From the IMG/VR virus record IMGVR_UViG_3300012931_000759, positions 276,393-340,392 of that record: DNA of 64,000 nt, one strand, 5' to 3'. Below the pieces are notes generated by a model. The model searched no databases. It was not told the DNA's origin and saw only the letters and a program-made list of their open reading frames with translations. A program made the translations under genes and the position numbers. Shown here piece by piece: positions 1,026-46,485 of this stretch. How positions within the stretch are numbered: the first letter of the stretch is position 1; each line of letters starts with the position of its first letter.

Positions 1026-1038
1026 GCTGTCAAAAATC

Positions 1039-1055
1039 TATCAATAGATTGGCAT
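1039..1055 (+). promoter_or_regulatory. Recurring intergenic motif, copy 1 (TATCAATA-GATTG-GCAT); candidate phage promoter
   Basis: Same spacing as copies at 43720, 45094 and 46469; overlaps the palindrome AATCTAT-CA-ATAGATT. Confidence 0.5.
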
Positions 1056-1065
1056 TAAGGGCAAG

Positions 1066-1251
1066 ATGCGACCTAGGATCAAACCACAGCTTGTAAACAA
1101 ATGTATCCATTGTACTTGCAAGGTTATCTCTTCGCGATGTGATGAATGCCTTAGATACCAGCAGTGCTGTAGTTTTTTTTTTGAGCGTTTGGGAGCGCAA
1201 CGGGACGTTACAAAGGGAACGTGGAGCAGGCAGTTGCCCTGTCCAAATTGA
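1066..1251 (+). CDS. Possible small Cys-rich protein
   Basis: 61 aa ORF with CIHC, CDEC and CC motifs, 10 nt downstream of motif copy 1; may be spurious. Confidence 0.25.
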   Translation: MRPRIKPQLVNKCIHCTCKVISSRCDECLRYQQCCSFFFERLGAQRDVTKGTWSRQLPCPN

Positions 1252-1391
1252 ATGATGTCTCGATTCCAAAGGCGATACAGTGGTGTCGAGAAAACCGTTT
1301 CAGGATCTACATTCCTAGGGAATCCTTGGAGATTTGGTATTTCATGGGTTTTCTTGTCTGTGAAATGCTATTGCTACAAATGGGGCCCACA

Positions 1392-1577
1392 ATGAGCGAA
1401 TTGTCTAAGTATGCGGAACGAAAGCAGATTAACATCCGGTTGGAATTAGAACTCCACGATTTTCTAGTAGAGTACGCCAGGCAGAACTACAAAACCGTCA
1501 CGGCCGTCGTGCGTGAGATGATAGCCGCCCTCTACCGACAGCACCAGGCGGCACAGAAGACTGCGGACGATGAATAG
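1392..1577 (+). CDS. Ribbon-helix-helix (Arc/CopG-like) DNA-binding protein
   Basis: KQINIRLELELHDFLVEYARQNYKTVTAVVREMI fits the RHH strand-helix-helix pattern; start placed at ATG 1392. Confidence 0.65.
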   Translation: MSELSKYAERKQINIRLELELHDFLVEYARQNYKTVTAVVREMIAALYRQHQAAQKTADDE

Positions 1578-1613
1578 GCGCATGGACGCGATGGCTATGC
1601 TGATGGGATTTCA

Positions 1614-1640
1614 TTGACGGTGCTTGCCGCCATGTACAAT
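1614..1640 (+). promoter_or_regulatory. Weak sigma70-like promoter candidate
   Basis: TTGACG(1614-1619)...TACAAT(1635-1640), but the spacer is only 15 nt. Confidence 0.25.
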
Positions 1641-1642
1641 TG

Positions 1643-1793
1643 CGATGCGGTTGCGGAGCAACCGTGGATCGAAATTTAAATGACGCGCGGAGAATTTATC
1701 TCCGTGCCTTGATGGCTATATCTGTTCCTGCGGATAGCAGGAATACAACCGTCTATCAGCTTTGCTCAACTATGGATAAATCCAGATAGGCGG
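1643..1793 (+). ncRNA. Candidate structured RNA or leader with four consecutive stems
   Basis: CGGTTGC-GGA-GCAACCG; GCGCGGAGA-ATTTA-TCTCCGTGC; TTCCTGC-GGATA-GCAGGAA; CCGTCTATC...GATAGGCGG enclosing TGGAT-AA-ATCCA; mismatches read as G-U pairs on the + strand. Confidence 0.4.
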
Positions 1794-1811
1794 AAAGGTA
1801 GCAGAAAGCAA

Positions 1812-4082
1812 ATGAAAGTAAGATGGCACACAATGGCCGGCACCAACCATTCGTGGGCGTTTGTAGCCCAGGCCTTGGCACGGGCGATGAAACAGAGTGG
1901 TCATTCTGTGTTCATCAAATCGACAAACGGTCTAGAGCATTTTCCCGAAGACCTGAAGCCTCTTCTTCTGCCGGGCTATCACAGCCACCCCTCGTTACCA
2001 GAGGTTGCCTTCCTTGGCGAAAAGGGCATCACCAACTCCTTGTCTGATATTCCCAGTTGTGACATAAGAGAGTCTCCAGACCAGAACAGGCCATACGACC
2101 TGGAACTCGCCTACACCATCCTCTACCAGATACCGCGTCGGTTCTATGCCGAATCGGCATGTAGAATGGTTATTTGGAACTTCGAGAGTTCAATCATGCC
2201 CCCTGGATGGCAGATGTATCATCGCGGCGTGGATTACATCCTACCATCCAGCCAGTACTCCTCAGATATTTTCCTCCAGAATGGTGTACCGGCCTCGAAA
2301 CTTGTAGTTGTGCCGCATGGCGTGTACCGTGAGATGTTCCACCCCGGCATTCCGCCGTTCAAACTTCACACACAGAAGCGGATCAAGTTCCTACACAACG
2401 CAATCCCACACCACCGCAAGCTCCATGAACGCGTCATCGGGGCGTATCTTGACGCATTCACCGGGGACGACGACGTGTGCCTGGTGCTGAAGACCAAGTT
2501 CCTCCAGCCTTCCAAGGACAAGCCCTTCGAGGTCGACGTGCGCGAAATCCTGGAACGGAAACTGAAAGGCTGCCCGAATCCGCCCGAGATCGAGGTGATC
2601 ACATCCTTCGTCCCCGATATCGGATCGCTCTACACTGCCTGCGATGCGGTCGTCAGTATGAGCTCGTGTGAGGGCTATTGTCTTCCTTTGCTTGAGGCCT
2701 TGGCTTGCGGAAGTGTAGTTATCGCGCCCCGGCATGGCGGCCAACTTGATTTCCTGGATGACAGGAATGCGCTACTCGTGGACACTGGCGAGATGAAGGC
2801 TCCCTTGAGTATGCAGTACTGGACGCATGCCCCGGAGGCCGTCGTGGGCGACCCTAGCGAGAGGCATTGCGCCGAACTCATGCGGCGCGTATACGCCGAT
2901 CCGGCGGGGGAAAAGGCGCGCGTCGCCGAGGCAGCTCGCGTGACAACCGAGCGGTTCACGTGGGAGGCGGCAGCCAAACAGATCGTCGACCTGGCCGAGA
3001 CTCGCATGACCGAAAAGGCAATTTCTCCGTCGCCCCGCAAGAGAAGCGTCCTGTACGTGGTGCCCTACGACATGGCCGGTGGCGGCGAAATGTGGGTACG
3101 CGAGACCATCAAACGCCTCGACAAGAGCCGGTACGAGCCGAGCGTTGTGTTTCCGCTGGGAGCGAGGCCCGAGCTGGTCGCCCTGTTCAGCGACCTCGGG
3201 GTGCCATGCGACGACCTGAGGAACCAAGGGACAGGCAATGCGCTGAAGTGTATGATCGAGTCCGGCAAACCTGACATCGTCCATTTCTACAACAGCCTAC
3301 AGGTCTACAGCCTCCTTATGCGCACGATCCAGGAGGGTGCGTGGGGAGGCAAGCTGGTCGAGACCGTACACAGCGAACTGATGTGGCCGGACTCGATGAT
3401 GAAGGTCGCCGCACGACGCGGCGTCTCCATGATCGTCGGCGTCTCCGAGACCATCTGCGCGCGACTTGCGCGCCTCGGCAATCCGAATGTCAGGCACCTT
3501 CCGCAGCAGGTCGCATGGGACCGCTTCTCCGTCCCGAGGGGCAAGGAGGTTCTCGGAGAGATGGGGTTACCCACCGACAGGTTTACTGTGGGTACGGTGG
3601 CGCGCCTCTCGCCCGAGAAGAACATCCCGATGGTCCTGGCCTGCGCCAGGGCGATGCCCGACGCGCTGTTCGTGGTCGTGGGTGAGGGCCCGCAGGCCAC
3701 AGTCCTGAATGGAATGGCTTCCGGCCTCGCAAACGTGGTGTTCGCCGGACGGCGATCCGACGTCGAACGGTTCTATGCCGCCTTCGACGTCCTGCTTCTA
3801 CCATCCACCATGGAGGGTCTGCCGCTCACGATACTCGAGGCGATGGCGGCCGGGACACCGGTCGTTGCCTCCAAGGTCGGTGCCATTCCCGAGGTGGTGT
3901 CCGACGGAACGAACGGTTTCCTGGCCTCCAAGGCGCAGGAGTACGTGGCGGCCTTGGAGAAGCTGCGCGACCCGGCATCCAGGGATAGCATGGGCAAAAA
4001 TGCCATGGCGCTGGCTGACATCCTGAGAATGCGCGGCAACACCCAGAACATTAATACATTGTACGACTCGCTATTCAGGTAA
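1812..4082 (+). CDS. Tandem two-domain GT4-like (GT-B) glycosyltransferase
   Basis: Two E-x7-E motifs (EGYCLPLLEALACG; EGLPLTILEAMAAGTPVV), plus ARLSPEKN and GGGEMW. Confidence 0.9.
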   Translation: MKVRWHTMAGTNHSWAFVAQALARAMKQSGHSVFIKSTNGLEHFPEDLKPLLLPGYHSHPSLPEVAFLGEKGITNSLSDIPSCDIRESPDQNRPYDLELAYTILYQIPRRFYAESACRMVIWNFESSIMPPGWQMYHRGVDYILPSSQYSSDIFLQNGVPASKLVVVPHGVYREMFHPGIPPFKLHTQKRIKFLHNAIPHHRKLHERVIGAYLDAFTGDDDVCLVLKTKFLQPSKDKPFEVDVREILERKLKGCPNPPEIEVITSFVPDIGSLYTACDAVVSMSSCEGYCLPLLEALACGSVVIAPRHGGQLDFLDDRNALLVDTGEMKAPLSMQYWTHAPEAVVGDPSERHCAELMRRVYADPAGEKARVAEAARVTTERFTWEAAAKQIVDLAETRMTEKAISPSPRKRSVLYVVPYDMAGGGEMWVRETIKRLDKSRYEPSVVFPLGARPELVALFSDLGVPCDDLRNQGTGNALKCMIESGKPDIVHFYNSLQVYSLLMRTIQEGAWGGKLVETVHSELMWPDSMMKVAARRGVSMIVGVSETICARLARLGNPNVRHLPQQVAWDRFSVPRGKEVLGEMGLPTDRFTVGTVARLSPEKNIPMVLACARAMPDALFVVVGEGPQATVLNGMASGLANVVFAGRRSDVERFYAAFDVLLLPSTMEGLPLTILEAMAAGTPVVASKVGAIPEVVSDGTNGFLASKAQEYVAALEKLRDPASRDSMGKNAMALADILRMRGNTQNINTLYDSLFR

Positions 4083-4096
4083 GGTGGCGCAGGGAC

Positions 4097-7000
4097 ATGG
4101 ATGAGATTAACCCTAAGTTGTGGGACGGCGACTTCGGGGAATTGCGCGAAGGTGAGGGCGAGGGCCGTCAAGGTTGCCGCTTGGAGGGGTCGAGCGCTTC
4201 CGCGAACGTGCCACTTATCGGCATTGAGCCCTGGTCGGTGTACCGCTTCCAAGTAACCTTAAGGAACGCGGGTGGAAGCGGTCGGCTGTGCTTTAATCTG
4301 CGCGTCAATGGCCAGGATTTTCCGCCCGCCATGCTCGACTGTCCAGCCGACCCGCTTTGGCGCGTGTTCGAGGTCGATGTGGCGACAGCCCGGTGCGTCA
4401 AGGGTACACCGGGCATCTTTAGGATCCATCGTCTTCCCGTGGATTCGGGAACGATGCTCGTAGGGCGTATCGCCGCAGAAAAGTTGCCGCATGGCGTCGG
4501 GCCCACACCTGAACCTAGGTTAGTGGCCACGGAAGGCAACATCGGCATCTGTGCGCCCGTCGCAAAATACGCTGTGTTGATGGAGGAAGGTATGGATGAG
4601 TTCGACCAGCAATTTTGGCGCGGTAAGAACCTTGTCGCCAAGAAGGACGATCGGGGCGCAAAATGTCTCTCCATGGAAGGCGACAGATCCATCATATTCG
4701 TGCCCGTCAAGGTAGAGCCGAACTCGGTGTACAGGTGCCAACTCGACCTAAGGCGCGAGACCGGGAATGGCAAAATCTACTGTAACCTCTACGCCAACCG
4801 AAGTTTTGATTTCCCACACATCTCCCTCGCGTGCGAGCTGGGCAGCTGGGGAACCTACGACATCCAGGTCAGGACCGGGACTTTTCCGCCCAACCTCCCC
4901 ATTGTGCTGAGGTTGTGGCGGTCGCCTGCGGGAACCGGATCCCTGCTCGTGAAGCGCATAGCGCTCGAGAAGCTGCCGCCGGACGCGCCTGCCGAGGAGC
5001 CGAAACTGGTGGTGTCCTCGTCTGTCGAACGGCTTATGGTGGTCCTTCCGCCGACGGTGGAAAAGACGATCCCTGCGCCCAAGGGGATACGCGTGCCGCG
5101 CGCAAACAAGCCGCCCCCGATCGAAGTACTTCCACACCGCAAAAGAGTGCCCGACCTGCCCAACAGGCTGTCCTACTCGCGTTTTGAGCGGGAACCCACA
5201 AAAGTCCTCGTTGTGTCAGAGATGGGGGACGAGACGGCTATGCGGGAGGCCTTCGAGGCCATAGGTATCTCATGCGAGGGCGCAGCCATGGCCGGAAATG
5301 TATCGCGGTTCCCCGACATGGCGCAGAGCGCCGCCGCGAACTGGATCCACTTTCACATCCGCAGAGGAACACTCTTAACTCCGGAGATTGTCGATGGGAT
5401 CAGAAACGCCAGGCCGGGCATCGCAGTCACTATGTGGGCGCAACCCGGATGGCCGCTTTTCGACGCGGCATTGCTCCGGGTTCTCCGCGCCGCCGATCTT
5501 GCGCTGGTTGGTGGTGACATCGAGCTAGCCACCTGGCGCGCTGCTGGATGCTTTAACGTCGAACTGTGGGATCCGGGTGCTACAAACTTGTCCCCTTCCG
5601 GCGAGGATTCTGGATACGATGTGGTAGCGGTGTCAGACGATCCGTCCGATCCACATTCAGATCTTGCTGCGGCGCTGGCCGGGAAGTTTGGCGCGCGTGC
5701 CGTCTTCGCGCCTAGGGAGGATGTTGGCAGGCGTGTTGCCCTGGGCGGAGTCGGTGTAGCAGTGTTCGCAGACCAATGGCCATCACGCAGCCTGTTCGGC
5801 CTCATGGCCACCGGAATCCCAGTGGTTGCTAGGCGGTCCCTTGGCACCATGGAGTGGTGTCGGAACGGAATCGACCTTCGCCTTTTCGACACCCCTGAGG
5901 AATGCGTAGCTATCGTTTCCCAGCTGCTAGACTGTCCCGAGGTCGCGCAGACTATTGGCGCGGAAGGGGCAGCCCTGGCTGCCACCCATTCGCGGATCGC
6001 ACGCGCCAAGGAGCTAGCCACACGGCTCGGGTGCTTTGAGACAACCATGACCTGCTTTCCCAAGGACCGGACATCCTACACGTTCGGACATGTGCTCTGT
6101 GCCATGAAAGCGGCACCCCCGGAGCTGATGGGCCGCAGTGGCAACGGGGAGGTGGATGTTTCAACCGCTTCGTTCGCCGAATGCCGCGATCTTGAAGCCA
6201 AGATCATCAGATCCAACCCGGATCTATTACATATCCATCTGGAGGACGAGGACGACGGTCTGCCTTGGCGCGACCTGCTGATAGATCTCCGCAGGCGCAT
6301 GCCGCATATGCTGGTTACAGTGTGGCATCATGGTGGCCAGGGGGTCGACAGGAGGATGATGGATCTGCGTTTCCTGGTTGACCACATGTTTGTCGGGGAT
6401 ACAGAATCGCTGGCACGCTACCGCGCGGAGTCTATCGTAGGCGTCGCGGAATGGAGTGCCGGGGTAGCCCCTTCGGAAAATCCTATAGCTTTCCGCGAGG
6501 CCTTGTACACCCTTGCCAAGAGTATGGGGACGAGAAGGGACACTTTCCTCAGGGGCGCAGACGGACAAATGGTTGACCTAACAGTGTTTATCGGCACCTG
6601 TAACCGGTACGACCAGCTACGGAGAGCGGTCGAGACAGCGCTTGCCTCGGCAGGCAATCGAACAATAGAAATCATCGTGAACGATGCCGGATCCACCGAT
6701 GGAACACAGGATTGGATGCGCAAGATGGCAGTCACCGACAAACGGATTGTTCCAATCTTCTCCGGTAAACGCACAAGTTTCACACAGGCCTTCAACGAGG
6801 CTCTACAGATTACAAAAGGTAAGTACATCTGCTGGCTCAGCGACGATATAGTATCAGAGGGTCAGTCCCTATCCGACATGTGCTCAATTATGGACGAGAT
6901 CGAACCCATGGACATGGGCGGGTTCTGCGTACGCAACTCCTGGGGCTACGAGTACACAGTCAGGAAGGACACCGGATTCTATTTCCCGCCAGTTGGGTGT

Positions 7001-7546: not shown

Positions 7547-7548
7547 AT

Positions 7549-30519: not shown

Positions 30520-30544
30520 ATTCCGGCTGCCCTGTGCGTATAAT
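30516..30544 (+). promoter_or_regulatory. Sigma70-type promoter upstream of prkA
   Basis: TTGAAT(30516-30521)-17 nt-TATAAT(30539-30544). Confidence 0.6.
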
Positions 30545-30614
30545 CTCTTTAAACAGGGGAAGGATTGCGTCCCGCTCCGGCCAAAGGCCGGGAAAAACCG
30601 CGAAAGGATGGAGC

Positions 30615-36977: not shown

Positions 36978-37538
36978 ATGGCAAGGGTTTGTATCACCGG
37001 GCACCGCCCGGATCCTTTTCTGGTGTCGCATTACCAACTTGAGGCTGTGGAACGTCTCGCTGGCAATGTTACCTGCGCGCTCAAGCGCGAGTACGGCGAC
37101 GAGCTGATGTTCAACTTAGGTGGAGCTGTGGGCGCTGACCAATGGATGGGCGCTGCCGCCATTGAACATGGCGTGAAGTACAGCCTATTCCTGCCGTTCT
37201 TGCCACAGATCCAGGCCCGTTACTGGGACGAGCAGCAGCGCGACGAACTTGACCGCCAGATGAAGGGCGCCGCTAAAATCGTGATCGTAGATCCATCGGG
37301 CCAATACGACGTTGCCAAATACTACGAGCGCGACCGCCTGATGGTGGACGAGGCCGATTTTGTCGTGGCGTTCTGGGTCGGCCGTCGACGCGGAGGCACC
37401 TTTGAGACGATGAAGTATGCTCTATCCAAGTCGAAATTTGTACTCAACGCCATGGATCACCTGCGTCCTGTGTTCAAGCAGGACTTGGAGAGCGGATGGA
37501 CTCCGCCACACTTGAGAGGGGAAACCGAAGATGAATAA
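36978..37538 (+). CDS. YspA/DUF1273-like SLOG-fold protein
   Basis: CITGHRP, GGAVGADQW, LPF..Q...W, RDRLMVD, GGTFET..YA. Confidence 0.8.
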   Translation: MARVCITGHRPDPFLVSHYQLEAVERLAGNVTCALKREYGDELMFNLGGAVGADQWMGAAAIEHGVKYSLFLPFLPQIQARYWDEQQRDELDRQMKGAAKIVIVDPSGQYDVAKYYERDRLMVDEADFVVAFWVGRRRGGTFETMKYALSKSKFVLNAMDHLRPVFKQDLESGWTPPHLRGETEDE

Positions 37539-38175
37539 TGGGGTCAAGACCCGTCGCTACCTTGTGAACAACGAGGAAATCCTTGTGCTGATTGAATCCT
37601 GGCGGAATGCTAACCAGCACGAGAAAACCAAGCTTGCGAACCAGGTAGTTTCTCGTCTCGCCTTCCTTGTTCACTCCAAGATTAGGCTCCACAAGGGGTC
37701 CCCACTGTACGACGATCTCCTCCAGGAGGGGCGGCTAGGTATCATGAAGGCCCTTCAGGATTTCGAGCCTGAACGTGGCCGTAATTTTTTCATGTTCGCC
37801 ACTTGGCATATTCAAACTAGGGTGCGCCGACTACTTCTGCGCGAGGTGCGTCGTTGCGAGTCCCCGGCTGGAGATATGCTGCTGGTGGCCAAAAGTGTCT
37901 CCGAGACCCGCGAGCACCTCCTAGCGCAGGAGACCGGCACTGCCCTTGAGAGTCGGGAGAGCTGCGGTGCTATTATGAAAGTGCTGAGTTTCCTGTCGGA
38001 CAGCGACCGCAAAGTGCTAGTTATGCGTTTCGGCTTCGACGGCGAAGAGCCTCGTACATTCCAGCAAATCGGGAACGAACTTGGAATTTCCAAGCAGCGC
38101 GCACAGCAAATCGAAGCCGGTGTTTTGCGCCGTCTGCGCAGGAATAATGAGCTTATGGACCTAATTGGTGGGTAG
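37531..38175 (+). CDS. Sigma70-family RNA polymerase sigma factor (regions 2 and 4)
   Basis: DDLLQEGRLGIMKALQDFEPERG..F..FATWHI; MRFGFDGEEPRTFQQIGNELGISKQRAQQIE. Confidence 0.9.
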   Translation: MNNGVKTRRYLVNNEEILVLIESWRNANQHEKTKLANQVVSRLAFLVHSKIRLHKGSPLYDDLLQEGRLGIMKALQDFEPERGRNFFMFATWHIQTRVRRLLLREVRRCESPAGDMLLVAKSVSETREHLLAQETGTALESRESCGAIMKVLSFLSDSDRKVLVMRFGFDGEEPRTFQQIGNELGISKQRAQQIEAGVLRRLRRNNELMDLIGG

Positions 38176-38184: not shown

Positions 38185-41100
38185 ATGCCGATGATCTACT
38201 TGGTGGATGACATCGAATCCACTATCAAGAGAATGTTATCTGACGAGGAGCTGAGGGGTCTTGGTCTCAACAAGATCAAAGTGCGCCGAACCCTATCCTC
38301 GTTTAGGGGTGACGAGATTGCCGCTTCCGTTTTTCTCAAGAAATACGCCCTGCGTGATGCTGATGACGAGGTAGCCGAGCTGACCTTGGAGGAGGCCAAG
38401 GATCGGTGGGCGGTTGCCATCGCCAAGGGGGAGGAGCTGTTCTCTGGCGAGCGCAAGGAGGCTCCGTACTTCCGTGAACTGTATGAGCATTTCCTACCGG
38501 CTGGCCGCCAGATGTTTGCTTTGGGTAACAGCCAGATGAGAAACGTAACGTTCACGAATTGTCTGTCTGGCAGCACATTTGTGCCAACGGACGCAGGTTT
38601 ACGGAAATTGGATGCGCTGTCCAAGACAAAGGTGCGCCTGAACGGCAAAAGCTATATGGCCAAGGTTTGGCGCACGGGATCCAAGCTCGTTAGACGGTTG
38701 GATACTGTTGAAGGGTATTTTGCCCTGCCGACTGGCGACCATCGGTTCCAATTAGTCGATGGATCTTGGCGTTCTGTGGACAAACTCCAGCCCGGTGACC
38801 GCATTGTGTTGGGACATGATAGTAGGCCTTTTGGTCCTTCTAATGAACATGAAGAATTGAGAGGTTTTGCGGCTGGCCTATTTGTTGGAGTTGGTACATT
38901 TGCCGGTGAAGGTTTCCAGGTCGCAAATGTGCGTCTGTTCGGGAAGAATTCAAGATTCTTGGTGGAAAAGATTGCCAGTTTGTATGGTGGCAGTCCTCTC
39001 TCTCATGCTGAACATATATCCTATAACAGTACAGCATGGGCGCGCGATATGTTCGAAAGTACAGGCATCCAGCACGGCAATAAAACGATCACTGATCGTC
39101 TCATGTCCCAATCATGGTCGTTCCTGCGTGGTTTTTTGCGAGGACTGTTTGATGCCAATGGATGTGTTATTGATAGCCAAAAAAACCACCAGCGGCAGAT
39201 CGTGCTGGTCCAATCGGATCGCGACATGCTATGTCGGGTACAGATCCTCTTGTTGGCGTTTGGTATTCGTTCGGTCATATACAAGGGAGAATTTCCCAAG
39301 GGTGTTTTTCAGTGTCGACAAGGATGGTCTTTACACATTAGTAGACGTTCGTTCGAGACATTTGCCGAGTTCATAGGATTTGCGCATCCAAGCAAGGCGG
39401 CAAAGATGCGCACTGCGTTGAACCGTGCGCCTTTTAAGCCGGACATTTGGTATGCTCGTGTCAAAAGCGTAACGAATTTTCAACGCATGGATGTGTACGA
39501 TATGAGTGTTTTTGGTATACATGCGTTTCCGGCAAACGGTTTGGTTGCCCATAACTGCTATGTTACCCAGATCGAGGATGACAGTATTGAGGGCATCTAT
39601 GGCGCGGCCCAGAAACTGGCCAAAACATACTCGTACGGCGGCGGCATCGGACTGTGCGTGGGTGAATTGCGCCCTGCGGGCGCGCGTGTGTCGAACAGTG
39701 CGCGCCAGTCGACCGGCTCCGTCAGCTTCATGGAGCTGTTCTCGCTGACGACGGGCCTGATTGGCCAAGCGGGGCGCCGTGGCGCCCTAATGATTACCAT
39801 GCCAGTATCCCATCCAGACGCAGAAGAGTTCATCGAGGTCAAACACGGGAACACTGACAAGGTTAAGTACGCGAACATTAGTCTGAAACTGACCGACGAG
39901 TTCATGCAGGCCGTCGTCGAGGACAGGATGTTCCGGCAGACCTACACCACGAAGCATGAGACGGTGTGGCGCGAAGTGCGCGCCCGTGACCTATGGCAGA
40001 AAATCATCCAGAGCGCCCGTGACTCGGCAGAGCCCGGCCTGATGTTCTGGGATCGCATGGTGACCATGTCGCCCTCGGAAATTTACCCGAGATTACAAGT
40101 CCATAGTACTAATCCTTGTGTGACGGGAGATACTTTAGTTGCGACGCCTTCTGGCTGGAAAAGGGCCGATTTATTCCAAAAAGGCGATCATATTTCTACT
40201 GTGTGTGGTTTCGGTTTGGTCGAAAGAGTAGAAACACATCATAATGTACCGGTCTACAAAGTAGAATTTTCAGACGGAACGATATTGAAAGTAACTGCTG
40301 CCCATCAGTTCCATGTGGCAAAAAAGGATACAAAAACAGAAAAATATCCAAGGAAATATACTCCTACCAGGCTAGATCAAATGGAAGTTGGGGATTTTGT
40401 AAGGGCTTCTGGTTTCGAATGTCCAGATCTGCCAGAAGGCCAATTAAAAGATTTTTGTGACGCTTTTTTGGCTGGTGTGTTGTTGGGAGACGGATGTTAC
40501 ACTCCAAAAATGACAGCTAGTAAAGTGGTAAAGATTGCATCTGATATCAGAGACAATAAATGGAACGAGCTACTAAAGAGCAAATTTGGAGAACGTGGTG
40601 TGATATTATCTTGCTACGGGGCGACAGATGGGTCATGTTCTTGTAGTCTTACCTCGCAGAATGGCGACTTGGTGAGCTTGGTGGACGAATTTGGTCTGGT
40701 TCACACATATTCTTATCATAAGCGTATTCCTGATCATTTGTGTTTTGGAAACAAAGAACAAATGCGAGGTGTTCTAGATGGTCTTTTCTCCACTGATGGA
40801 AATGTGAATCTTAGCGGAGACTCTCCACAGATAAGGTTGAAATCCACATCACGGTTTATGTTGGCCCAAGTTAAGAGAATGCTTCTGATGTTTGGCATAT
40901 TCTCGTCATTGGGGAATGTCGGTAAAACTTCAATAATACTTGGGCGAAAAGTAAAATCACGAGACCGATACGAATTGGTTGTGAGCGGGCAAAGTGTCGA
41001 TTTTTTCATCAGACGTATAGGGATCTCTCATCCAGCAAAGAAGGCGTTATGCCAAGATTTGCTTTTGAATTGGGCTTTGACTGGTAACACTTGGAGAGTA

Positions 41101-42591
41101 AAACTGAAATCGGTTGAGTTCATGGGATGCGAAACGGTCTATGATATCTATGAACCATCCACCGATACATGGATTACGGATGGAATTGTTTCGCGCGGTT
41201 GTGGAGAGCAGATCCTGGAGAAAGGCGGCGCCTGCGTGCTGGGCTCGCTGTTGCTCCACACCTTCGTGGTCGACCCGTTCACGCCACAGGCGCGATTTGA
41301 CTTCGACTGCTTCAAGCAGATGACCAGGCGAGCCGTCAGGCACCTGGATAACGTGGTCGAGCTGAACTTTGGTCGGCATGCCCTCGAAGAGCAGGAGGAG
41401 GCGGCCCAGCTCGGACGCCGAATTGGCCTTGGAGTGACTGGCCTCGCCGATACACTTGCGGCCCTTGGCATCAAGTACGACTCTGAAGAGGCACTTAAGG
41501 CGGTCGACCAGGTTATGTCGGCCAAAAAAGACGCCGAATACCGTGCTTCAATCGACCTGGCTATGGTACGCGGGCCTTTCAGGATGTTTGATCCCAAGGC
41601 ACACTATGAGCAGGGTTTCTGCGCCACGTTGCCGGAGGAGATCAAGGCGTTGGGACGCGAGCGTGGCCAGAGGAACGTTGCCATCTCGACCGTCGCTCCG
41701 GCCGGTAGTCTGAGTGTGATAGCCCAATGCTCAAGCGGTATCGAGCCCGTTTTCGCGCTTCGCTACAAACGATATGTCGAACTGGGCTCGGAACGAAAGG
41801 AGTTCTCCATCCGCCACCAAGGTTTGTCGCGCATGGCTGCAGTTCTGGGTAGCGAGACGGCACCGTGGTGCTGGGTCACGGCCCATAGTATCGACCACCG
41901 ATTCAGGGTGGCTATGCAGGGCGTCATCCAGAGGCATACTGATGCCTCGATCTCGAGTACCATCAACCTACCTAAGGATGCCATGGCCGAGACCGTCGGC
42001 GAAATCTACATGGACGCCTGGAAGGCGGGACTGAAGGGAATTACGGTGTACCGTGAGGGCGCGCGAGAGGGTATACTTGTAACAGAGGAGTTTGCCCGGC
42101 AGGCTGGATCCCCGATGGACACCATTATCTACGAGGCGAGAGCGGAGGCGGGGGACAAGTTCTATATTCCGATCTCCTACACTGGAGGTGATGTAAGGAA
42201 GCCTTACCAGGTGTTCCTGATCAACTACAAAACCTCTGAGAATGACCGGTTTGCCAAAATGGGCAACGATTTGGTGCGTATGCTGCGCGAGAAAGGCGTA
42301 GAGGACGCTGACCCGAAGCGTTTCCAGAAGTACCTGGATCGGAGCACGACACAGCTGGGGAAGATTACAAGATTCCTGTCCCTCTCCATGAAAACGGGCC
42401 ATTTTGAGGAGGCAGTCGAGATTCTTGGCGAGCATGGCACGGTTGGAACGCTAGCTGCCGAGCTATACAAGATTCTTCGCATAAGTCTCGCAAACGCGAA
42501 GGTTTTGTGCCCCAACTGCGGTAGCTCGAACGTCAGGATGGAGGAGGGATGTCGGCATTGCCTGGATTGTAGTTGGTCGGGTTGCGGATAG
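38185..42591 (+). CDS. nrdJ: Class II (adenosylcobalamin-dependent) ribonucleotide reductase with two inteins
   Basis: FLPAGR, N|CYV, GGGIG, GRRGALM, AEPG, TNP|CGEQ, RRIGLGVTG, VAPAGS, GLKGITVYREG, C-terminal CPNC...EEGC..C..C. Confidence 0.93.
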   Translation: MPMIYLVDDIESTIKRMLSDEELRGLGLNKIKVRRTLSSFRGDEIAASVFLKKYALRDADDEVAELTLEEAKDRWAVAIAKGEELFSGERKEAPYFRELYEHFLPAGRQMFALGNSQMRNVTFTNCLSGSTFVPTDAGLRKLDALSKTKVRLNGKSYMAKVWRTGSKLVRRLDTVEGYFALPTGDHRFQLVDGSWRSVDKLQPGDRIVLGHDSRPFGPSNEHEELRGFAAGLFVGVGTFAGEGFQVANVRLFGKNSRFLVEKIASLYGGSPLSHAEHISYNSTAWARDMFESTGIQHGNKTITDRLMSQSWSFLRGFLRGLFDANGCVIDSQKNHQRQIVLVQSDRDMLCRVQILLLAFGIRSVIYKGEFPKGVFQCRQGWSLHISRRSFETFAEFIGFAHPSKAAKMRTALNRAPFKPDIWYARVKSVTNFQRMDVYDMSVFGIHAFPANGLVAHNCYVTQIEDDSIEGIYGAAQKLAKTYSYGGGIGLCVGELRPAGARVSNSARQSTGSVSFMELFSLTTGLIGQAGRRGALMITMPVSHPDAEEFIEVKHGNTDKVKYANISLKLTDEFMQAVVEDRMFRQTYTTKHETVWREVRARDLWQKIIQSARDSAEPGLMFWDRMVTMSPSEIYPRLQVHSTNPCVTGDTLVATPSGWKRADLFQKGDHISTVCGFGLVERVETHHNVPVYKVEFSDGTILKVTAAHQFHVAKKDTKTEKYPRKYTPTRLDQMEVGDFVRASGFECPDLPEGQLKDFCDAFLAGVLLGDGCYTPKMTASKVVKIASDIRDNKWNELLKSKFGERGVILSCYGATDGSCSCSLTSQNGDLVSLVDEFGLVHTYSYHKRIPDHLCFGNKEQMRGVLDGLFSTDGNVNLSGDSPQIRLKSTSRFMLAQVKRMLLMFGIFSSLGNVGKTSIILGRKVKSRDRYELVVSGQSVDFFIRRIGISHPAKKALCQDLLLNWALTGNTWRVKLKSVEFMGCETVYDIYEPSTDTWITDGIVSRGCGEQILEKGGACVLGSLLLHTFVVDPFTPQARFDFDCFKQMTRRAVRHLDNVVELNFGRHALEEQEEAAQLGRRIGLGVTGLADTLAALGIKYDSEEALKAVDQVMSAKKDAEYRASIDLAMVRGPFRMFDPKAHYEQGFCATLPEEIKALGRERGQRNVAISTVAPAGSLSVIAQCSSGIEPVFALRYKRYVELGSERKEFSIRHQGLSRMAAVLGSETAPWCWVTAHSIDHRFRVAMQGVIQRHTDASISSTINLPKDAMAETVGEIYMDAWKAGLKGITVYREGAREGILVTEEFARQAGSPMDTIIYEARAEAGDKFYIPISYTGGDVRKPYQVFLINYKTSENDRFAKMGNDLVRMLREKGVEDADPKRFQKYLDRSTTQLGKITRFLSLSMKTGHFEEAVEILGEHGTVGTLAAELYKILRISLANAKVLCPNCGSSNVRMEEGCRHCLDCSWSGCG
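38560..39555 (+). mobile_element. Intein 1 in nrdJ (Cys1...His-Asn, +1 Cys) with degenerate LAGLIDADG
   Basis: CLSGST, TGDHRF, GLFVGVG and GLFDANG, VYDMSV..HAFPANGLVAHN. Confidence 0.92.
40117..41199 (+). mobile_element. Intein 2 in nrdJ with non-canonical C-terminus (...IVSRG|C) and intact-looking LAGLIDADG
   Basis: CVTGDTLV, VTAAHQF, GVLLGDG, GLFSTDG, VYDIYEPSTDTWITDGIVSRG; removal restores STNP-CGEQ; AT-rich. Confidence 0.88.
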
Positions 42592-42602
42592 CAGGTTCTC
42601 TC

Positions 42603-42869
42603 ATGAATATTCCCGTGATCGAACTCTTGGCACACATCTGTCTCAACAGGGAGGAAGCGGACTCCGAGCTTCCGCGCGCCTTCCGGAAAGTGGTGAAGCA
42701 GGGCCTCCGCAGGATGTTTGAGCCTATCCTTGGTTCGCAGGTCGGATATGCCATCGAGCATCTAATTGTGGCCGCAAAGGCCTTTGATCTGGTCAGAGAG
42801 GACGGCGAATATCTGATTGCCGTCATCAAACCGAAAGAGAGCCACATATGTCCGACGGAGCGAAACTGA
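42603..42869 (+). CDS. Hypothetical protein
   Basis: ORF fills the gap after nrdJ. Confidence 0.5.
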   Translation: MNIPVIELLAHICLNREEADSELPRAFRKVVKQGLRRMFEPILGSQVGYAIEHLIVAAKAFDLVREDGEYLIAVIKPKESHICPTERN

Positions 42870-42870
42870 A

Positions 42871-43239: not shown

Positions 43240-43249
43240 GAGGAGAAAG

Positions 43250-43708
43250 GTGTCTTTTTACGTCAAGAACAAGAAAGGTGATTTTGTTCCCGTAAAGGTT
43301 GAGCAGGTCCTGTCAAAAGATTGGGCTGGCAAGTTGATCATGGTCCGGATCGGCAGCGACGAGCACCCAGCGGATGAGCAGGAGCTGATCGATGTGAATG
43401 ACAGCCTCGACACGGCCACCGTGATCGAAATGCTGCCGGATACCAGCTTCCTCATCACTTCATTCGCCATTCAGTTCGACGTCGTCGGCAGTCTGGAGGA
43501 GCTGAGAAAACAGTACGTGGCCGTGCGGGTTACTGGTGATGACGATCTGTCCAAACTTGGGGGTCTCCAAAAGCACGCTAGGGAGAAACTGAAGGGAAAG
43601 GCCAAGAAAGTCGCCGTACTTCCGACGCCCTTGACCGTGGATGACTATCATGAAGTGATGAAAATCAAAGAACGATGCGATTTGCGCAGATCGCGCCGGG
43701 GGAGATGA
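43250..43708 (+). CDS. Hypothetical protein
   Basis: AGGAGGAG RBS before a GTG start. Confidence 0.65.
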   Translation: MSFYVKNKKGDFVPVKVEQVLSKDWAGKLIMVRIGSDEHPADEQELIDVNDSLDTATVIEMLPDTSFLITSFAIQFDVVGSLEELRKQYVAVRVTGDDDLSKLGGLQKHAREKLKGKAKKVAVLPTPLTVDDYHEVMKIKERCDLRRSRRGR

Positions 43709-43719
43709 TCGGCAAAACC

Positions 43720-43736
43720 TACCAATATCGAAGCAT
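43720..43736 (+). promoter_or_regulatory. Recurring motif, copy 2 (TACCAATA-TCGAA-GCAT)
   Basis: Intergenic, upstream of phoH. Confidence 0.5.
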
Positions 43737-43793
43737 TACATTGAAAGCAACCGCACCAGCGCTCGGCATCGGCCGAAGGAGGGTTTCGCCACC

Positions 43794-45080
43794 TTGACGA
43801 AACGATTCCTGATAGACACCAATGTTATTCTACATGACCCGAAAAGTATTGAAGTTTTCGCAGACAATGAAGTAATCATCCCCATTCCGGTGTTGGATGA
43901 ACTCGACCAGATCAAGGTCCGCCCTGATGAAAAGGGGCGGAATGCCCGGTCGGTCATCCGTCGTCTGGACGAGCTGCGCTCCCTCGGCTCCTTGAATGCC
44001 GGAGTGCGGCTCCCGTCCGGTTCCCTTATTCGCGTGGAGTTAAACCACCGCGCGCTTCCGCAGCCCCTCATCGACAGTGTTGACAACCGCCTGATTGGTA
44101 CAGCTCTAGGCCTGATACAAGAGAAGCCCGACGTGCCCCTTATCGTGGTGACCAAGGATATCAACCTGCGGGTAAAATGCGACGCTCTCGGCATCATTGC
44201 CCAGGACTATGAGCGCGACAAACTCGCCAAGATGCCGGATGCCCTTTACACCGGGTTCCGGACCCTCGATGTCCCCTCGTCTATCATCGACGAGCTGTAT
44301 GTCAAGAAAGTTGTGAATATCGAACTGCCCGACGCGCACATCAACGAGTTTGTGCTTCTACAGTCCGTTGACCGCGAGAAACACAGCGGCATTGGGCGCG
44401 TGGTCGTCCCCAACTGCCTGGTTCTCGTCACGCCGCCCAACGAGGCGTGGGGCATTAAGCCCCGCAACCTTGAGCAGAAGCTGGCGCTCTCGCTTCTCAT
44501 GGATCCCGAGATAAAGCTGGTAACCCTCGTGGGCCGCGCGGGATCAGGAAAGACCCTCATGGCTGTCGCTGCTGCGCTCCACCAGACCGTGGAGCGGAAG
44601 CTATTCCAGCGGGCGCTGCTGTCCCGACCAGTTCAGCCGCTTGGACGCGATATTGGATTCCTGCCCGGTACGGTCGAGGAAAAGCTCGCCCCCTGGCTGG
44701 CCGCCCTAAACGACAGCCTCGAACTCCTGTTTGCCAAGGATATGGAGATGCTGGAAATATACAAGCGACAGGGTATCCTACAGGTTGAGCCTCTCACATA
44801 CATCAGGGGACGCAGCATCCCCAACTCCTTTATGATCGTGGATGAAGCCCAGAATCTCACCCTCCATGAACTCAAGACTATCGTTACCCGCATCGGTGAG
44901 GGAAGCAAAATCATCCTGACGGGGGACCTTGAACAAATCGATAATCCTTTCGTGGACTTCGCCAGCAACGGACTCACCAACGCCATCGAGCGTCTCAAGG
45001 ACAAGGCCATCACAGGTCATGTCACTCTCCGCAAGTGTGAACGTTCCGAACTCGCCGAACTCGCCGCCGAAGTGCTCTGA
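43794..45080 (+). CDS. phoH: PhoH-family ATPase with N-terminal PIN domain (PhoH2/YlaK-like)
   Basis: IDTNVILHDP, VTKDINLRVK, GRAGSGKT, GFLPG..EKL.PW, YIRGRS, DEAQN, GDLEQID; GGAGG RBS and TTG start. Confidence 0.93.
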   Translation: MTKRFLIDTNVILHDPKSIEVFADNEVIIPIPVLDELDQIKVRPDEKGRNARSVIRRLDELRSLGSLNAGVRLPSGSLIRVELNHRALPQPLIDSVDNRLIGTALGLIQEKPDVPLIVVTKDINLRVKCDALGIIAQDYERDKLAKMPDALYTGFRTLDVPSSIIDELYVKKVVNIELPDAHINEFVLLQSVDREKHSGIGRVVVPNCLVLVTPPNEAWGIKPRNLEQKLALSLLMDPEIKLVTLVGRAGSGKTLMAVAAALHQTVERKLFQRALLSRPVQPLGRDIGFLPGTVEEKLAPWLAALNDSLELLFAKDMEMLEIYKRQGILQVEPLTYIRGRSIPNSFMIVDEAQNLTLHELKTIVTRIGEGSKIILTGDLEQIDNPFVDFASNGLTNAIERLKDKAITGHVTLRKCERSELAELAAEVL

Positions 45081-45093
45081 TTTCATTCTGATA

Positions 45094-45110
45094 TATCAAT
45101 AATCTCACAT
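45094..45110 (+). promoter_or_regulatory. Recurring motif, copy 3 (TATCAATA-ATCTC-ACAT)
   Basis: Intergenic, at the start of the structural-gene block. Confidence 0.5.
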
Positions 45111-45187
45111 TTGTATGGGTTGTGCGGAAGTCTTCTAGGCCTCCGCGTAACCCGTCGCCATATGGCACGATTGGAATCGGAGACGCG

Positions 45188-46456
45188 ATGGCTACCCCCC
45201 CTTTCCTACGGAATGCGTATCCAGCCGATCTTGCAGCAGGCGTGGACACGTCCACATTGGTTTCTGCCGATGTGCTAGACGTAGACCAGGATCTTGTTCC
45301 CTCGAGCATCCTCGTTTACATCGATGGCGCGTTGGCATATGATGGTGCCTCCGGATTTGTCGCGCCGTTTTCCGGGACGGTATCCACAACAACCGTGGAT
45401 GGGTACGATGGCTACCATCTCTCTGTGGCCCGGTCAGTATCCTATTCCAATTCTTCGTGGATCATGGTGCGCGTGGTTGCCAGGGACACGGATGATCTTG
45501 TCCTGGATGAAATCTGGCAATTCTACACAGTTACGGTTCTTGCGGCCTTGCGACAAGGTCCGTACGAGATCTCGTTGGATGCGGAGTTCAGCGGTCCGAT
45601 GATGTTGTCGACCCTACAGGACGCATCGTACTTCTCCCTTGACAGGGCTTATGTACGGGCCTTGGATCCCTTGCCGCCCGGTAGCGCCGCACCCATGGGC
45701 GTGCGGCTTTGGGTGGAGGGTTTTCGTGGCGAACAGCCTTTTACGCTCACCATATCTCCTCTGGTTCGGGATGTTGCGGGCAATGTTCTTCCACCAAGTG
45801 GTCGCGTAGCCACCATTCTTCCGTTTCAGTCCTCGGCTTTCCTCTCCAACACGGATGGGTTTGTGCGTTCTTGGCACGAAAGCCGCCTTATCCTGAAGGA
45901 CGGCCTCCGGGCCTATCTTGCCGACACCCGTGGGATGGATGTGTTCGATATCGAGCACGGCCTCGGCAGGTCGGTGAAGTGGGCGCAGATATTGGACTCG
46001 TACGGGACAAGGGCGGCCTGTATCCTCGGGACGGCCAACTATGCTTTCGAAGATATGGAGCCCCCCTTCCTGGCCAACCGTTCTCCTACTCCAGGGGCCA
46101 CGGGCGTTCCACTAGGGACGAACATTCTGCTTTCAGTGGCCGATCTTGTGACGGCGGTCGAGGTGACGGCTGTGGCTGTCTATGTGAACGGACGGTTGGC
46201 ATTCGGTGGTGCGAGTGACGGTGGATGGGCGAACGGCTACGGCGGGCAGGTTTCAGTCGGCCACCAGATCATCGACATTCGGCTGTATCCTCCTGCGGGA
46301 GGGATTGTGGTTGGCACAAATACAGTGTCGGTCCTGGCCGCCGACCTTGTTGGGAATCTGCTGGATACCAGTTATACATTCACAGTGGGCGCCCCTCCGC
46401 CGACGGCTGGTGGATTCGGCACTGGCGGCTTTGGCACTGCGCCGTTCGGTGAGTAG
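45188..46456 (+). CDS. Putative virion protein with Ig-like repeats; paralog of 54505..56520
   Basis: PPFL.N..P repeats, DGYDGY, C-terminal GGFGTGGFGTAPFG. Confidence 0.6.
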   Translation: MATPPFLRNAYPADLAAGVDTSTLVSADVLDVDQDLVPSSILVYIDGALAYDGASGFVAPFSGTVSTTTVDGYDGYHLSVARSVSYSNSSWIMVRVVARDTDDLVLDEIWQFYTVTVLAALRQGPYEISLDAEFSGPMMLSTLQDASYFSLDRAYVRALDPLPPGSAAPMGVRLWVEGFRGEQPFTLTISPLVRDVAGNVLPPSGRVATILPFQSSAFLSNTDGFVRSWHESRLILKDGLRAYLADTRGMDVFDIEHGLGRSVKWAQILDSYGTRAACILGTANYAFEDMEPPFLANRSPTPGATGVPLGTNILLSVADLVTAVEVTAVAVYVNGRLAFGGASDGGWANGYGGQVSVGHQIIDIRLYPPAGGIVVGTNTVSVLAADLVGNLLDTSYTFTVGAPPPTAGGFGTGGFGTAPFGE

Positions 46457-46468
46457 GTAGCAAAAATC

Positions 46469-46485
46469 TGTCAATAATTCCGCAT
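46469..46485 (+). promoter_or_regulatory. Recurring motif, copy 4 (TGTCAATA-ATTCC-GCAT)
   Basis: Intergenic; CAAAAATCTGTCAATA matches the copy at 1031 in 15 of 16 nt. Confidence 0.55.

What the first reader, a model, noticed from the sequence alone, without database searches (positions are those of the whole stretch)
1031..46485. Recurring intergenic motif TRYCAATA-N5-RCAT: candidate phage-specific promoter
Seen: four copies with identical spacing, all + strand and intergenic: 1039 TATCAATA-GATTG-GCAT, 43720 TACCAATA-TCGAA-GCAT, 45094 TATCAATA-ATCTC-ACAT, 46469 TGTCAATA-ATTCC-GCAT. Three have CAAAA just upstream, and the 1031 and 46461 copies match in 15 of 16 nt. They precede the RHH/glycan region, phoH and the first two structural genes. 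Inference: a late or middle promoter for a phage sigma factor (possibly 37531..38175), which would co-regulate glycan and virion genes.
Basis: partly seen in the sequence, partly recalled or inferred. Interest (0 to 1): 0.7.

Follow-up and report, generated by a model that had tools for sequence, protein, structure and literature searches.

The report
Late-type promoter motif of a huge phage
The recurring TATCAATA-N5-RCAT sequence is a real, conserved signal that sits in front of genes in a 340-kb uncultured wetland phage, and it most likely acts as the phage's own late-type promoter; this is a sound but fairly ordinary kind of phage regulation.

Summary
All four window copies exist as described. 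The pattern, defined from the window alone, finds six more exact copies in the rest of the 340-kb genome. All ten are intergenic and point the same way as the gene downstream, including one minus-strand copy in front of a minus-strand gene. Unbiased k-mer enrichment returns TCTATCAATA as the top intergenic word. A position matrix finds about 23-24 sites, none of them inside a gene.

The conserved block is about 22 nt: AAT-C-TATCAATA-(at)-N-g-CAT. There is no -35 element. Three of the four window sites are conserved at orthologous positions in a 442-kb relative whose flanking spacers have diverged. Relatives with 31-55% GC keep T[AG][TC][CT]AATA-N6-YAT upstream of the capsid operon.

Downstream genes include the capsid operon, the tail sheath, a fibre-like gene, many free-standing homing endonucleases, PIN-PhoH and an RHH/glycosyltransferase block. 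This resembles T4 late and phiEco32 single-element promoters.

No phage RNA polymerase was found. ORF 37531-38175 is a sigma-70-family protein with altered DNA-contact residues, but its link to this motif is unproven, and an HTH-only protein and a second sigma-like ORF are equally open candidates. No transcript 5' ends could be obtained.

Verdict: a real feature, a new member of a known kind, of moderate interest.

The parts
1033..1056 (+). Motif copy 1: AAAATC-TATCAATA-GATTG-GCAT-T. The core is at 1039-1046 and the predicted +1 is the A at 1054. It lies upstream of a small Cys-rich ORF (1066-1251), an RHH-type gene (probable start about 1392, end 1577) and the glycosyltransferase block.
   Evidence: PWM score 33.9. 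The orthologous site CAGAAATCTATCAATAGTTGAGCATT lies about 75 nt upstream of the RHH gene in relative G001. The RHH domain was located.
43714..43737 (+). Motif copy 2: AAAACC-TACCAATA-TCGAA-GCAT-T. The core is at 43720-43727 and the predicted +1 is the A at 43735, 58 nt upstream of the PIN-PhoH gene.
   Evidence: score 28.6. The orthologous site AAAACCTATCAATATCGGAGCATT is conserved upstream of phoH in G001, with an unalignable spacer around it.
45088..45111 (+). Motif copy 3: CTGATA-TATCAATA-ATCTC-ACAT-T. The core is at 45094-45101 and the predicted +1 is the A at 45109. It is followed by a strong leader hairpin and the 422-aa Ig-like-domain gene.
   Evidence: score 28.5. The orthologous site TCGACATATCAATAATCTCGCATT is present in G001. 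The leader hairpin has an energy of -24.3 kcal/mol and z = -4.95.
46463..46486 (+). Motif copy 4: AAAATC-TGTCAATA-ATTCC-GCAT-C. The core is at 46469-46476 and the predicted +1 is the A at 46484, 57 nt upstream of the 730-aa gene.
   Evidence: score 29.1. No syntenic orthologue was found in G001, which has paralogues of the 422-aa gene at that position instead.
37531..38175 (+). Phage sigma-70-family protein (214 aa, regions 2 and 4; RpoD/RpoS-like). It is one candidate reader of the motif, but this is unproven.
   Evidence: Pfam PF04542 and PF04545, NCBIfam, and PDB alignments to RpoS and SigA. Homologues are present in G001 to G004. There is weak N-terminal similarity to T4 gp55.
43794..45080 (+). 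PIN-PhoH fusion gene, downstream of copy 2.
   Evidence: Pfam PF13638 and PF02562.
45188..46456 (+). 422-aa protein with a weak Ig-like (Big_5) signal, downstream of copy 3. A virion-surface role is plausible but unverified.
46542..48734 (+). 730-aa protein of unknown function, downstream of copy 4. The only lead is a resemblance to viral carbohydrate-binding proteins.
1392..1577 (+). RHH-type (CopG/Arc-like) small DNA-binding protein. It is the first conserved gene downstream of copy 1.
   Evidence: phrog_876, the translation, and the conserved orthologue in G001.

Best explanation
The motif is the core of a phage-specific, late-type promoter class of an uncultured ~340-440-kb myovirus distantly related to Bacillus phage G.

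The 8-bp box T[A/G][T/C][C/T]AATA (TATCAATA in this genome), usually preceded by AAAT-C, plays the part of a -10 element. There is no -35 element. Transcription most likely starts at the invariant A of the (C/T)-A-T triplet, which lies 7 nt after the box.

Inferred mechanism: the host RNA polymerase core is redirected to these sites by a phage-encoded specificity factor. Candidates are the RpoD-like sigma at window 37531-38175, the sigma-like ORF at genome 133785-134354, or the conserved HTH-only protein at genome 148283-148840 acting as a co-factor.

The regulon has about 23-24 sites in this genome. It covers virion genes, many self-contained homing-endonuclease and transposase genes on either strand, and a few auxiliary operons (PIN-PhoH, RHH plus glycosyltransferases, dNMP kinase).

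Shown: the motif's existence, its distribution, orientation, architecture, conservation and gene associations.
For: - The window-defined pattern finds 10 exact copies genome-wide. All are intergenic and co-oriented with the downstream gene.
- About 23-24 PWM hits with score >=14 are all intergenic. The five on the minus strand each sit upstream of a minus-strand gene.
- Unbiased 7- and 8-mer enrichment ranks TATCAAT, TCTATCAA, CTATCAAT and TATCAATA first (p about 1e-15 to 1e-16).
- The dinucleotide-shuffle null gives 0.45 against 14 observed, and there are no copies on the coding sense strand.
- Information content is confined to 22 nt. A(+1) is present in 23 of 23 sites and T(+2) in 21 of 23. 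There is no upstream element and no enriched upstream word.
- No site overlaps a start codon. Distances from the end of the 24-nt site to the start codon run from 6 to 414 nt.
- In relatives with 31-55% GC, the motif is kept about 800-1000 nt upstream of the capsid gene, in front of the decoration-like gene, while the flanks diverge.
- In 20 close loci, 50 of 59 sense-strand cores lie in the 13% of sequence that is ORF-free, against 4 of 19 antisense cores.
- G001 has 19 matches against 0 for the reversed control, and G002 shows a 9:1 strand bias.
- Three of the four window sites are conserved at orthologous positions in G001.
- Downstream genes include the major head protein operon, the tail sheath, a tail-fibre-like gene and HNH, GIY-YIG, EndoVII and IS200/605 genes.
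- No sigma70-type promoter or terminator signal above chance lies near the window sites.
- No T7-like, beta or beta' polymerase was detected, while sigma-family genes are present.
- Precedents exist: the T4 late 8-bp box without a -35 (PMC2988020), and the phiEco32 gp36 single element with starts 6-8 bp downstream (PMC8948821).
Against: - No transcript 5' end was observed. No RNA run was listed for the window. Metatranscriptome run X3 holds only three short exact fragments inside the capsid operon and nothing over the window promoters.
- Late timing is inferred only from gene content. Some downstream genes (dNMP kinase, PhoH, glycosyltransferases) are not classic late genes.
- The best-annotated sigma has a region 4, although the motif lacks a -35.
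- The genome record is estimated at only 84% complete, and several large ORFs remain unannotated, so an unrecognised polymerase is not excluded.
- Gene calls come from my own simple ORF caller.
- In relatives with about 75% capsid identity the pattern is not enriched, so it is limited to a subclade.
Confidence: 0.72

Rival explanations
1. The element is a promoter, but it is read by an unrecognised phage-encoded RNA polymerase (single-subunit or highly diverged multisubunit) rather than by host core plus a phage sigma. The compact contiguous element that includes the start site would then be a polymerase recognition sequence.
For: All the information lies in one block of about 22 nt that extends through an invariant A-T at the presumed start. 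That is more reminiscent of phage-polymerase promoters than of most sigma promoters. Several large ORFs have no annotation, and the record is about 84% complete.
Against: No hit was found to T7-type RNAP, beta or beta' domains. The PF00940 control did not ring, so that negative is weak. The large ORFs that could be annotated are gyrase, ligases, DNA polymerase, and tail or baseplate proteins. The stretch between the box and the start is not conserved, unlike T7-type promoters. Sigma-family genes are present and conserved in close relatives.
Confidence: 0.08
2. The motif is an operator or activator site for a phage DNA-binding protein (for example the RHH protein at window 1392-1577 or the HTH protein at genome 148283-148840). 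The true core promoter elements lie elsewhere and are too weak to detect.
For: The genome encodes an RHH protein directly downstream of copy 1 and a conserved HTH-only protein. TATCAATA is a near-palindrome (TAT..ATA).
Against: The sites are strictly co-oriented with the downstream gene on both strands. Each gap usually has a single copy, not dyads or arrays. A second conserved element (YAT) sits at a fixed 6-nt distance on one side only. No other promoter-like signal accompanies the sites.
Confidence: 0.1
3. The motif is a binding site for host IHF or another nucleoid protein, because the core resembles the IHF consensus WATCAANNNNTTR with an upstream A-tract.
For: TATCAA matches WATCAA, and an A-rich tract precedes it. 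Copy 1 (TATCAATAGATTG) fits the full consensus.
Against: The TTR half is not conserved: positions +11 to +13 carry almost no information. Variants common in relatives (TACTAATA, TGCTAATA) break the ATCAA core yet occupy the orthologous sites. Conservation instead falls on ..AATA and on YAT. Strict co-orientation with genes is not expected for an architectural site.
Confidence: 0.02
4. The motif acts at the RNA level, as a processing (RNase) site or 5'-UTR element in transcripts that start further upstream, rather than as a DNA promoter.
For: Most genes lie on one strand in long arrays, so read-through transcripts would contain the motif. Strong hairpins follow some copies.
Against: The minus-strand copies sit upstream of isolated minus-strand genes that have no upstream co-directional transcription unit. 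The hairpins are not general: only 4 of 23 sites have z < -1.5. The AT-rich octamer with a purine start at about one helical turn is the canonical geometry of a -10 element.
Confidence: 0.05
5. The motif is a chance or compositional artefact of AT-rich intergenic DNA.
For: Intergenic DNA has 49% GC against 56% genome-wide.
Against: Dinucleotide-preserving shuffles of the intergenic regions give 0.02 to 0.45 occurrences against 9 to 18 observed. The out-of-window copies validate the pattern, and the motif is conserved in relatives of very different GC content.
Confidence: 0.01

Closest known systems
Bacteriophage T4 late promoters (TATAAATA, read by gp55 with gp33 and the gp45 clamp)
   Same: Both have an 8-bp AT-rich box about one helical turn upstream of the start, no -35 element, and tens of copies per genome on either strand (PMC2988020). 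Both are found in front of virion genes and of free-standing homing-endonuclease genes, including ones among tRNA genes; the T4 endonuclease association is from my own knowledge. The box here differs from TATAAATA at one position.
   Different: Position 4 is an invariant C in this genome (C or T in relatives), never A. A conserved YAT start triplet and an AAATC upstream extension are present here. No significant gp55 or gp45 homologue was found, only a weak N-terminal resemblance between gp55 and the window's sigma. The phage is unrelated to T4-like phages; its nearest cultured relative by capsid protein is phage G.
phiEco32 middle/late promoters (single element tAATGTAtA, read by phage sigma gp36)
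   Same: Both have a single, highly conserved -10-like element with no -35. Starts in phiEco32 lie 6-8 bp downstream, and a phage-encoded sigma redirects the host core polymerase (PMC8948821). The predicted start here lies 7-8 nt downstream of the box.
   Different: The sequence is different. gp36 lacks region 4, which the authors use to explain the missing -35, whereas the best sigma candidate here has a clear region 4. The host and phage lineage are different, and nothing here has been validated experimentally.
Extended -10 (TGn-TATAAT) sigma70 promoters
   Same: Recognition is independent of a -35 and concentrates around -15 to -7. The T-R-Y triplet sits where TGn would lie if +1 is the A of YAT.
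   Different: The hexamer would read (C/T)AATA(A/T) rather than TATAAT, and R is mostly A rather than G. The same genome has a separate sigma70-like class, TTGACA-N15-GATAAGNT.
Bacillus phage G (nearest cultured relative by capsid protein, 52% identity)
   Same: It has a related major capsid protein and a decoration gene directly upstream of it.
   Different: Phage G's virion-gene spacers show terminators followed by TATAAT-like boxes, not this motif. It has no detectable homologue of the window's sigma or of the HTH protein, and it is described as lacking sigma factors (PMC7824862).

Membership tests
T4-type late promoter system (gp55/gp33/gp45) | 8-bp TATAAATA box at about -10 | tested here: not met
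   The box is TATCAATA. C is present at position 4 in 23 of 23 sites, and relatives use C or T there, never A. It matches the T4 box at 7 of 8 positions.
T4-type late promoter system (gp55/gp33/gp45) | No -35 or upstream sequence element | tested here: met
   Information content is about 0 from -50 to -5 relative to the box, and no 5-mer is enriched there.
T4-type late promoter system (gp55/gp33/gp45) | gp55-family late sigma encoded by the phage | tested here: inconclusive
   A phmmer search with T4 gp55 against all 400 predicted proteins gave the window's sigma as best hit, at a non-significant E of 0.44. BLASTP of the N-terminal 36 aa gave E = 0.005, and hhalign probability was 2.8%.
T4-type late promoter system (gp55/gp33/gp45) | gp45-type sliding clamp as activator, and a gp33 co-activator | tested here: inconclusive
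   gp45 had no significant hit (best E 0.25). gp33 was not searched. Sequence searches at this evolutionary distance are weak.
phiEco32-type single-element sigma promoters | One conserved -10-like element, with transcription starting 6-8 bp downstream | tested here: inconclusive
   The single element with an invariant A 7-8 nt downstream is shown. Actual start sites could not be mapped.
phiEco32-type single-element sigma promoters | Phage sigma lacking region 4 | tested here: inconclusive
   The window's sigma has region 4 (PF04545, 48 bits). The second sigma-like ORF (genome 133785-134354) shows only region 2 in Pfam. Which factor reads the motif is unknown.
Sigma-70 family protein (ORF 37531-38175) | Regions 2 and 4 above curated cut-offs | tested here: met
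   PF04542 scores 34.5 bits (cut-off 24) and PF04545 scores 48.4 bits (cut-off 24.1). It aligns to RpoS, SigA and RpoD chains in the PDB.
IHF binding site (WATCAANNNNTTR) | Both half-elements conserved | tested here: not met
   The TTR positions carry no information. CTAATA variants occupy orthologous sites.
Phage-RNAP promoters (T7-like, or phiKZ/AR9 nvRNAP) | Cognate phage RNA polymerase encoded in the genome | tested here: not met
   PF00940, PF00562 and PF00623 gave no hits, and the large ORFs are otherwise annotated. Caveats: the PF00940 control did not ring, the record is about 84% complete, and a few ORFs remain unannotated.

The most novel reading that the evidence does not exclude
The TATCAATA-N6-YAT promoters are not read by a region-4-less gp55- or gp36-like sigma. 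Instead they are read by a new arrangement: an RpoD-like phage sigma with rewired -12 and -35 contact residues that works without a -35, together with the clade-conserved HTH-only 'minimal sigma / gp33-like' protein, or else by a polymerase of unrecognised fold. This would be a late-transcription apparatus shared by a subclade of the 331 related metagenomic loci found here (contigs up to 448 kb), in a lineage whose only cultured relative, phage G, is thought to lack sigma factors altogether.
Probability: 0.2. Interest if true: 0.6.

Novelty: new member of a known kind. Interest (0 to 1): 0.4.

Why it matters
The motif gives a usable regulatory map for an uncultured clade of huge phages. It marks the boundaries of transcription units, flags likely late or virion genes among proteins that have no detectable homologues, and shows that the many homing endonucleases carry their own copies of the phage's promoter, as in T4. 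It also defines a simple experiment (core polymerase, three candidate factors and a 30-bp template) that could show how these phages redirect host transcription. It does not reveal a new principle.

Tried and rejected
1. Megablast and tblastn against cultured phages found no close relative. Only the capsid protein links to phage G, and the 422-aa and 730-aa proteins have no matches.
2. RNA evidence: no RNA run was listed for the window. Run X3 gave three exact short contigs in the capsid operon and none over window 43500-49400. There is no 5'-end information.
It is not evidence either way.
4. RNAalifold on a MAFFT alignment of the capsid-operon leaders found no structure, because the hairpins are not aligned in register. 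Per-sequence folds show hairpins in most of them. Across all 23 sites, though, leader structure is not general, so I do not use it as evidence for the start site.
5. The hairpin with a U-tract after the copy at genome 49340 looked like a promoter-plus-terminator mini-unit. It may simply be the upstream gene's terminator.
6. The CTATGGATAAATCCAGAT element at window ~1765 looked like a variant motif. It is part of a separate two-copy repeat of about 70 nt and has no Rfam match.
7. Presence/absence of the sigma and HTH homologues against motif presence across G001-G005 does not discriminate between the candidates.
8. Searching phage G for the motif gave nothing.
9. The IHF-site reading was rejected.

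Full report
CONTEXT. The window is the last 64 kb (276393-340392) of a single 340,392-bp contig with 55.7% GC. The contig is an IMG/VR virus record, linear and about 84% complete by CheckV. An identical contig is present in wetland metagenome runs. My own ORF caller finds about 400 genes, 373 of them on the + strand, and about 92% of the genome is coding. The closest cultured relative by major capsid protein is Bacillus phage G at 52% identity. IMG/VR holds 331 related loci with 74-97% capsid identity, on contigs up to 448 kb.

THE OBSERVATION. The pattern was chosen after looking at the data, so I tested it outside the window.
- The remaining 276 kb contain six more exact matches. All ten copies are intergenic and co-oriented with the next gene. 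The single minus-strand copy (87440) lies 40 nt upstream of one of the few minus-strand genes.
- A 24-nt position matrix finds about 23-24 sites scoring >=14. None is in a gene, and the five on the minus strand each precede a minus-strand gene.
- Dinucleotide-preserving shuffles of the intergenic regions give 0.45 TATCAATA against 14 observed. The 313 kb of coding sense strand contain none.

ANATOMY. Information content across 23 sites is confined to about 22 nt: A-A-T-C-T-A-T-C-A-A-T-A-(a)-(t)-N3-(g)-C-A-T. T1, C4, A5 and T7 of the box and the A of CAT are invariant. Positions -50 to -5 carry no information, and no 5-mer is enriched there, so there is no -35 element.

A pyrimidine followed by an A, 7-8 nt after an AT-rich octamer, is the geometry of a -10 element plus a start site. 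That reading is an inference from established knowledge of bacterial promoters. No site overlaps a start codon; distances from the end of the 24-nt site to the start codon range from 6 to 414 nt. Near the window copies there is no sigma70-type promoter or intrinsic terminator above chance.

CONSERVATION.
- In relatives with 31% to 55% GC, the best matrix hit within 2 kb upstream of the capsid gene is the same element: TATCAATA, TACTAATA, TGCTAATA, TGTCAATA or TATTAATA. It usually lies 800-1000 nt upstream, in front of the gene that corresponds to phage G's capsid decoration gene. The flanks differ between relatives.
- Across 20 close loci (292 kb), 50 of 59 sense-strand cores lie in the 13% of sequence free of long ORFs, against 4 of 19 antisense cores.
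- The complete 442-kb relative G001 has 19 matches to CTRYYAATA-N6-YAT, against 0 for the reversed control. G002 has a 9:1 strand bias and prefers CTRCTAATA. Relatives at about 75% capsid identity (G003-G005) show no enrichment, so the motif belongs to a subclade.
- Three of the four window sites are conserved at orthologous positions in G001: upstream of phoH, upstream of the 422-aa homologue (each 22/24 identical in otherwise unalignable spacer, with local GC of 41% against 55%), and upstream of the RHH gene. The fourth site, upstream of the 730-aa gene, has no syntenic counterpart there.
- Phage G itself lacks the motif.

WHAT IT PRECEDES.
- Virion genes: the decoration-like gene plus the major head protein, the tail sheath, a tail-fibre-like gene, and a gene cluster that includes a protein with a head-maturation-protease-like domain. 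In the window, the 422-aa protein has only a weak Ig-like lead and the 730-aa protein only a weak carbohydrate-binding lead.
- Selfish genes: four HNH endonucleases, an EndoVII/HNH gene, a GIY-YIG endonuclease and an IS200/605 TnpA-TnpB pair. Several are on the minus strand or sit between tRNA genes.
- Others: PIN-PhoH, the RHH gene followed by the glycosyltransferase block, dNMP kinase, and several small unknown genes.
This mixture, on both strands, parallels T4, where late promoters occur in either polarity (PMC2988020). That T4 late promoters also serve free-standing endonuclease genes is from my own knowledge. A separate small sigma70-like class, TTGACA-N15-GATAAGNT, occurs at 43-142 kb. 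A perfect TATAAT sits in the gap at window 30520-30614, upstream of the array that contains the sigma gene. The phage therefore appears to have host-type promoters as well.

WHO READS IT. No T7-like, beta or beta' polymerase domain was found, and the large ORFs that can be annotated have other functions. The caveats are the incomplete record, a few unannotated ORFs, and a PF00940 control that did not ring. There are three candidate factors.
(a) Window 37531-38175 is a 214-aa sigma-70-family protein with regions 2 and 4, most similar to RpoS, RpoD and SigA. In the alignments the aromatic 'wedge' tryptophan is kept (FATWH against YATWW). The positions that, from my knowledge of E. coli sigma70, set -12 and -35 specificity are replaced (Q437->T, T440->R, R584->K, E585->Q, R588->Q). 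It probably does not read TTGACA/TATAAT promoters. Its N-terminus weakly resembles that of T4 gp55 (a lead only). Homologues are found in G001 (61%), G002 (33%), G003 (29%) and G004 (28%).
(b) Genome 133785-134354 is a weak region-2-only sigma-like ORF, found otherwise only in G001.
(c) Genome 148283-148840 is an HTH-only protein (GerE / region-4-like). It is well conserved (36-70% identity with many invariant columns) in G001 and G003-G005, and belongs to a family known only from metagenomes.
phiEco32's authors explain the lack of a -35 by gp36 lacking region 4 (PMC8948821). By that logic candidate (a) is not the obvious reader. However, presence/absence across relatives does not discriminate between the candidates.

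DIRECT EVIDENCE SOUGHT. No RNA run was listed for the window. A wetland metatranscriptome (X3) holds three exact 151-202-nt contigs inside the decoration and capsid genes and none over window 43500-49400. That is compatible with expression of the capsid operon but says nothing about 5' ends. Strong leader hairpins follow the predicted start at the capsid-operon site, with different stems in most relatives examined. They also follow window copy 3, whose G001 orthologue folds as well despite a different sequence. They are not general, with only 4 of 23 sites at z < -1.5, so I treat them as gene-specific leaders and not as proof of the start site.

RIVALS. An operator or activator site is disfavoured by the strict co-orientation, the single copies, and the one-sided YAT at a fixed distance. 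An IHF site (WATCAANNNNTTR) fails because TTR is not conserved and CTAATA variants occupy orthologous sites. An RNA processing site is disfavoured by the isolated minus-strand units. Chance or composition is excluded. An unrecognised phage polymerase remains a minor possibility.

VERDICT. The motif is real, is the dominant intergenic signal of this genome, and is conserved in a subclade of huge phages. It is best explained as a single-element, -35-less, late-type phage promoter. That makes it a new member of a known kind (T4 late, phiEco32 gp36). The assignment to the sigma at 37531-38175, and the 'structural' label for the two window genes, remain open.

Noticed in passing
window 1736-1804 and genome 123597-123665 (L007:3597-3665): A two-copy repeat of about 70 nt (…CTATGGRTAAATCYAGATAGGCGGAAAGGTAGCAG) lies immediately upstream of the glycosyltransferase gene at window 1812 and of another gene at 123.7 kb. 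It has no Rfam match. It could be a shared leader RNA or regulatory element.
   Followed up: partly
L003:9340-9412 (genome 49340-49412): One motif copy lies between the stop codon of a small gene and a strong hairpin with a U8 tract (-28.4 kcal/mol, z = -3.7), upstream of a thioredoxin-like gene. It is either a transcription unit of about 50 nt (a small RNA) or a promoter overlapping the upstream gene's terminator.
   Followed up: partly
window 38185-42591; genome 109146-113243, 148998-151799, 164195-168451: Inteins with LAGLIDADG endonuclease domains interrupt the ribonucleotide reductase large subunit, GyrB, a UDP-glucose dehydrogenase and a fourth large protein. Together with at least seven free-standing homing endonucleases, the genome is unusually rich in selfish elements.
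   Followed up: no
L006:14993-16608 (genome 114993-116608): An IS200/IS605-type TnpA plus a TnpB-like gene pair sits directly behind a copy of the phage promoter motif.
   Followed up: no
genome 55850-78217 (L003, L004): A cluster of 14 tRNA genes has HNH endonuclease genes inserted between them, each with its own motif copy. One further tRNA-like call lies at 234.2 kb.
   Followed up: no
genome 43094, 57851, 89375, 101192, 123184, 142290; window 30520-30614: A second, sigma70-like promoter class (TTGACA-N15-GATAAGNT) occurs in the 43-142 kb region. A perfect TATAAT lies in the gap upstream of the gene array that contains the window's sigma gene.
   Followed up: partly
L011:2276-2330 and the orthologous sites in L022-L041: Downstream of the capsid-operon promoter, most relatives examined have a 5-8-bp hairpin 12-14 nt after the predicted start. 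The stem sequences are unrelated between relatives, and the hairpin is followed by a conserved GATCAAAGAC. This is probably a conserved leader structure.
   Followed up: partly
window 43794-45080: The 'phoH' gene is a fusion of an N-terminal PIN domain and PhoH. In G001 the homologous ORF is about twice as long (806 aa).
   Followed up: no
window 36978-37538: A SLOG/YpsA-like protein (below the Pfam cut-off) is encoded immediately upstream of the sigma gene and overlaps it by 8 nt.
   Followed up: no
window 1066-1251: A 61-aa Cys-rich ORF starts 12 nt after the predicted start of promoter copy 1. It occupies a leader that is about 260 nt longer than in relative G001. Whether it is a real gene is unknown.
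   Followed up: no
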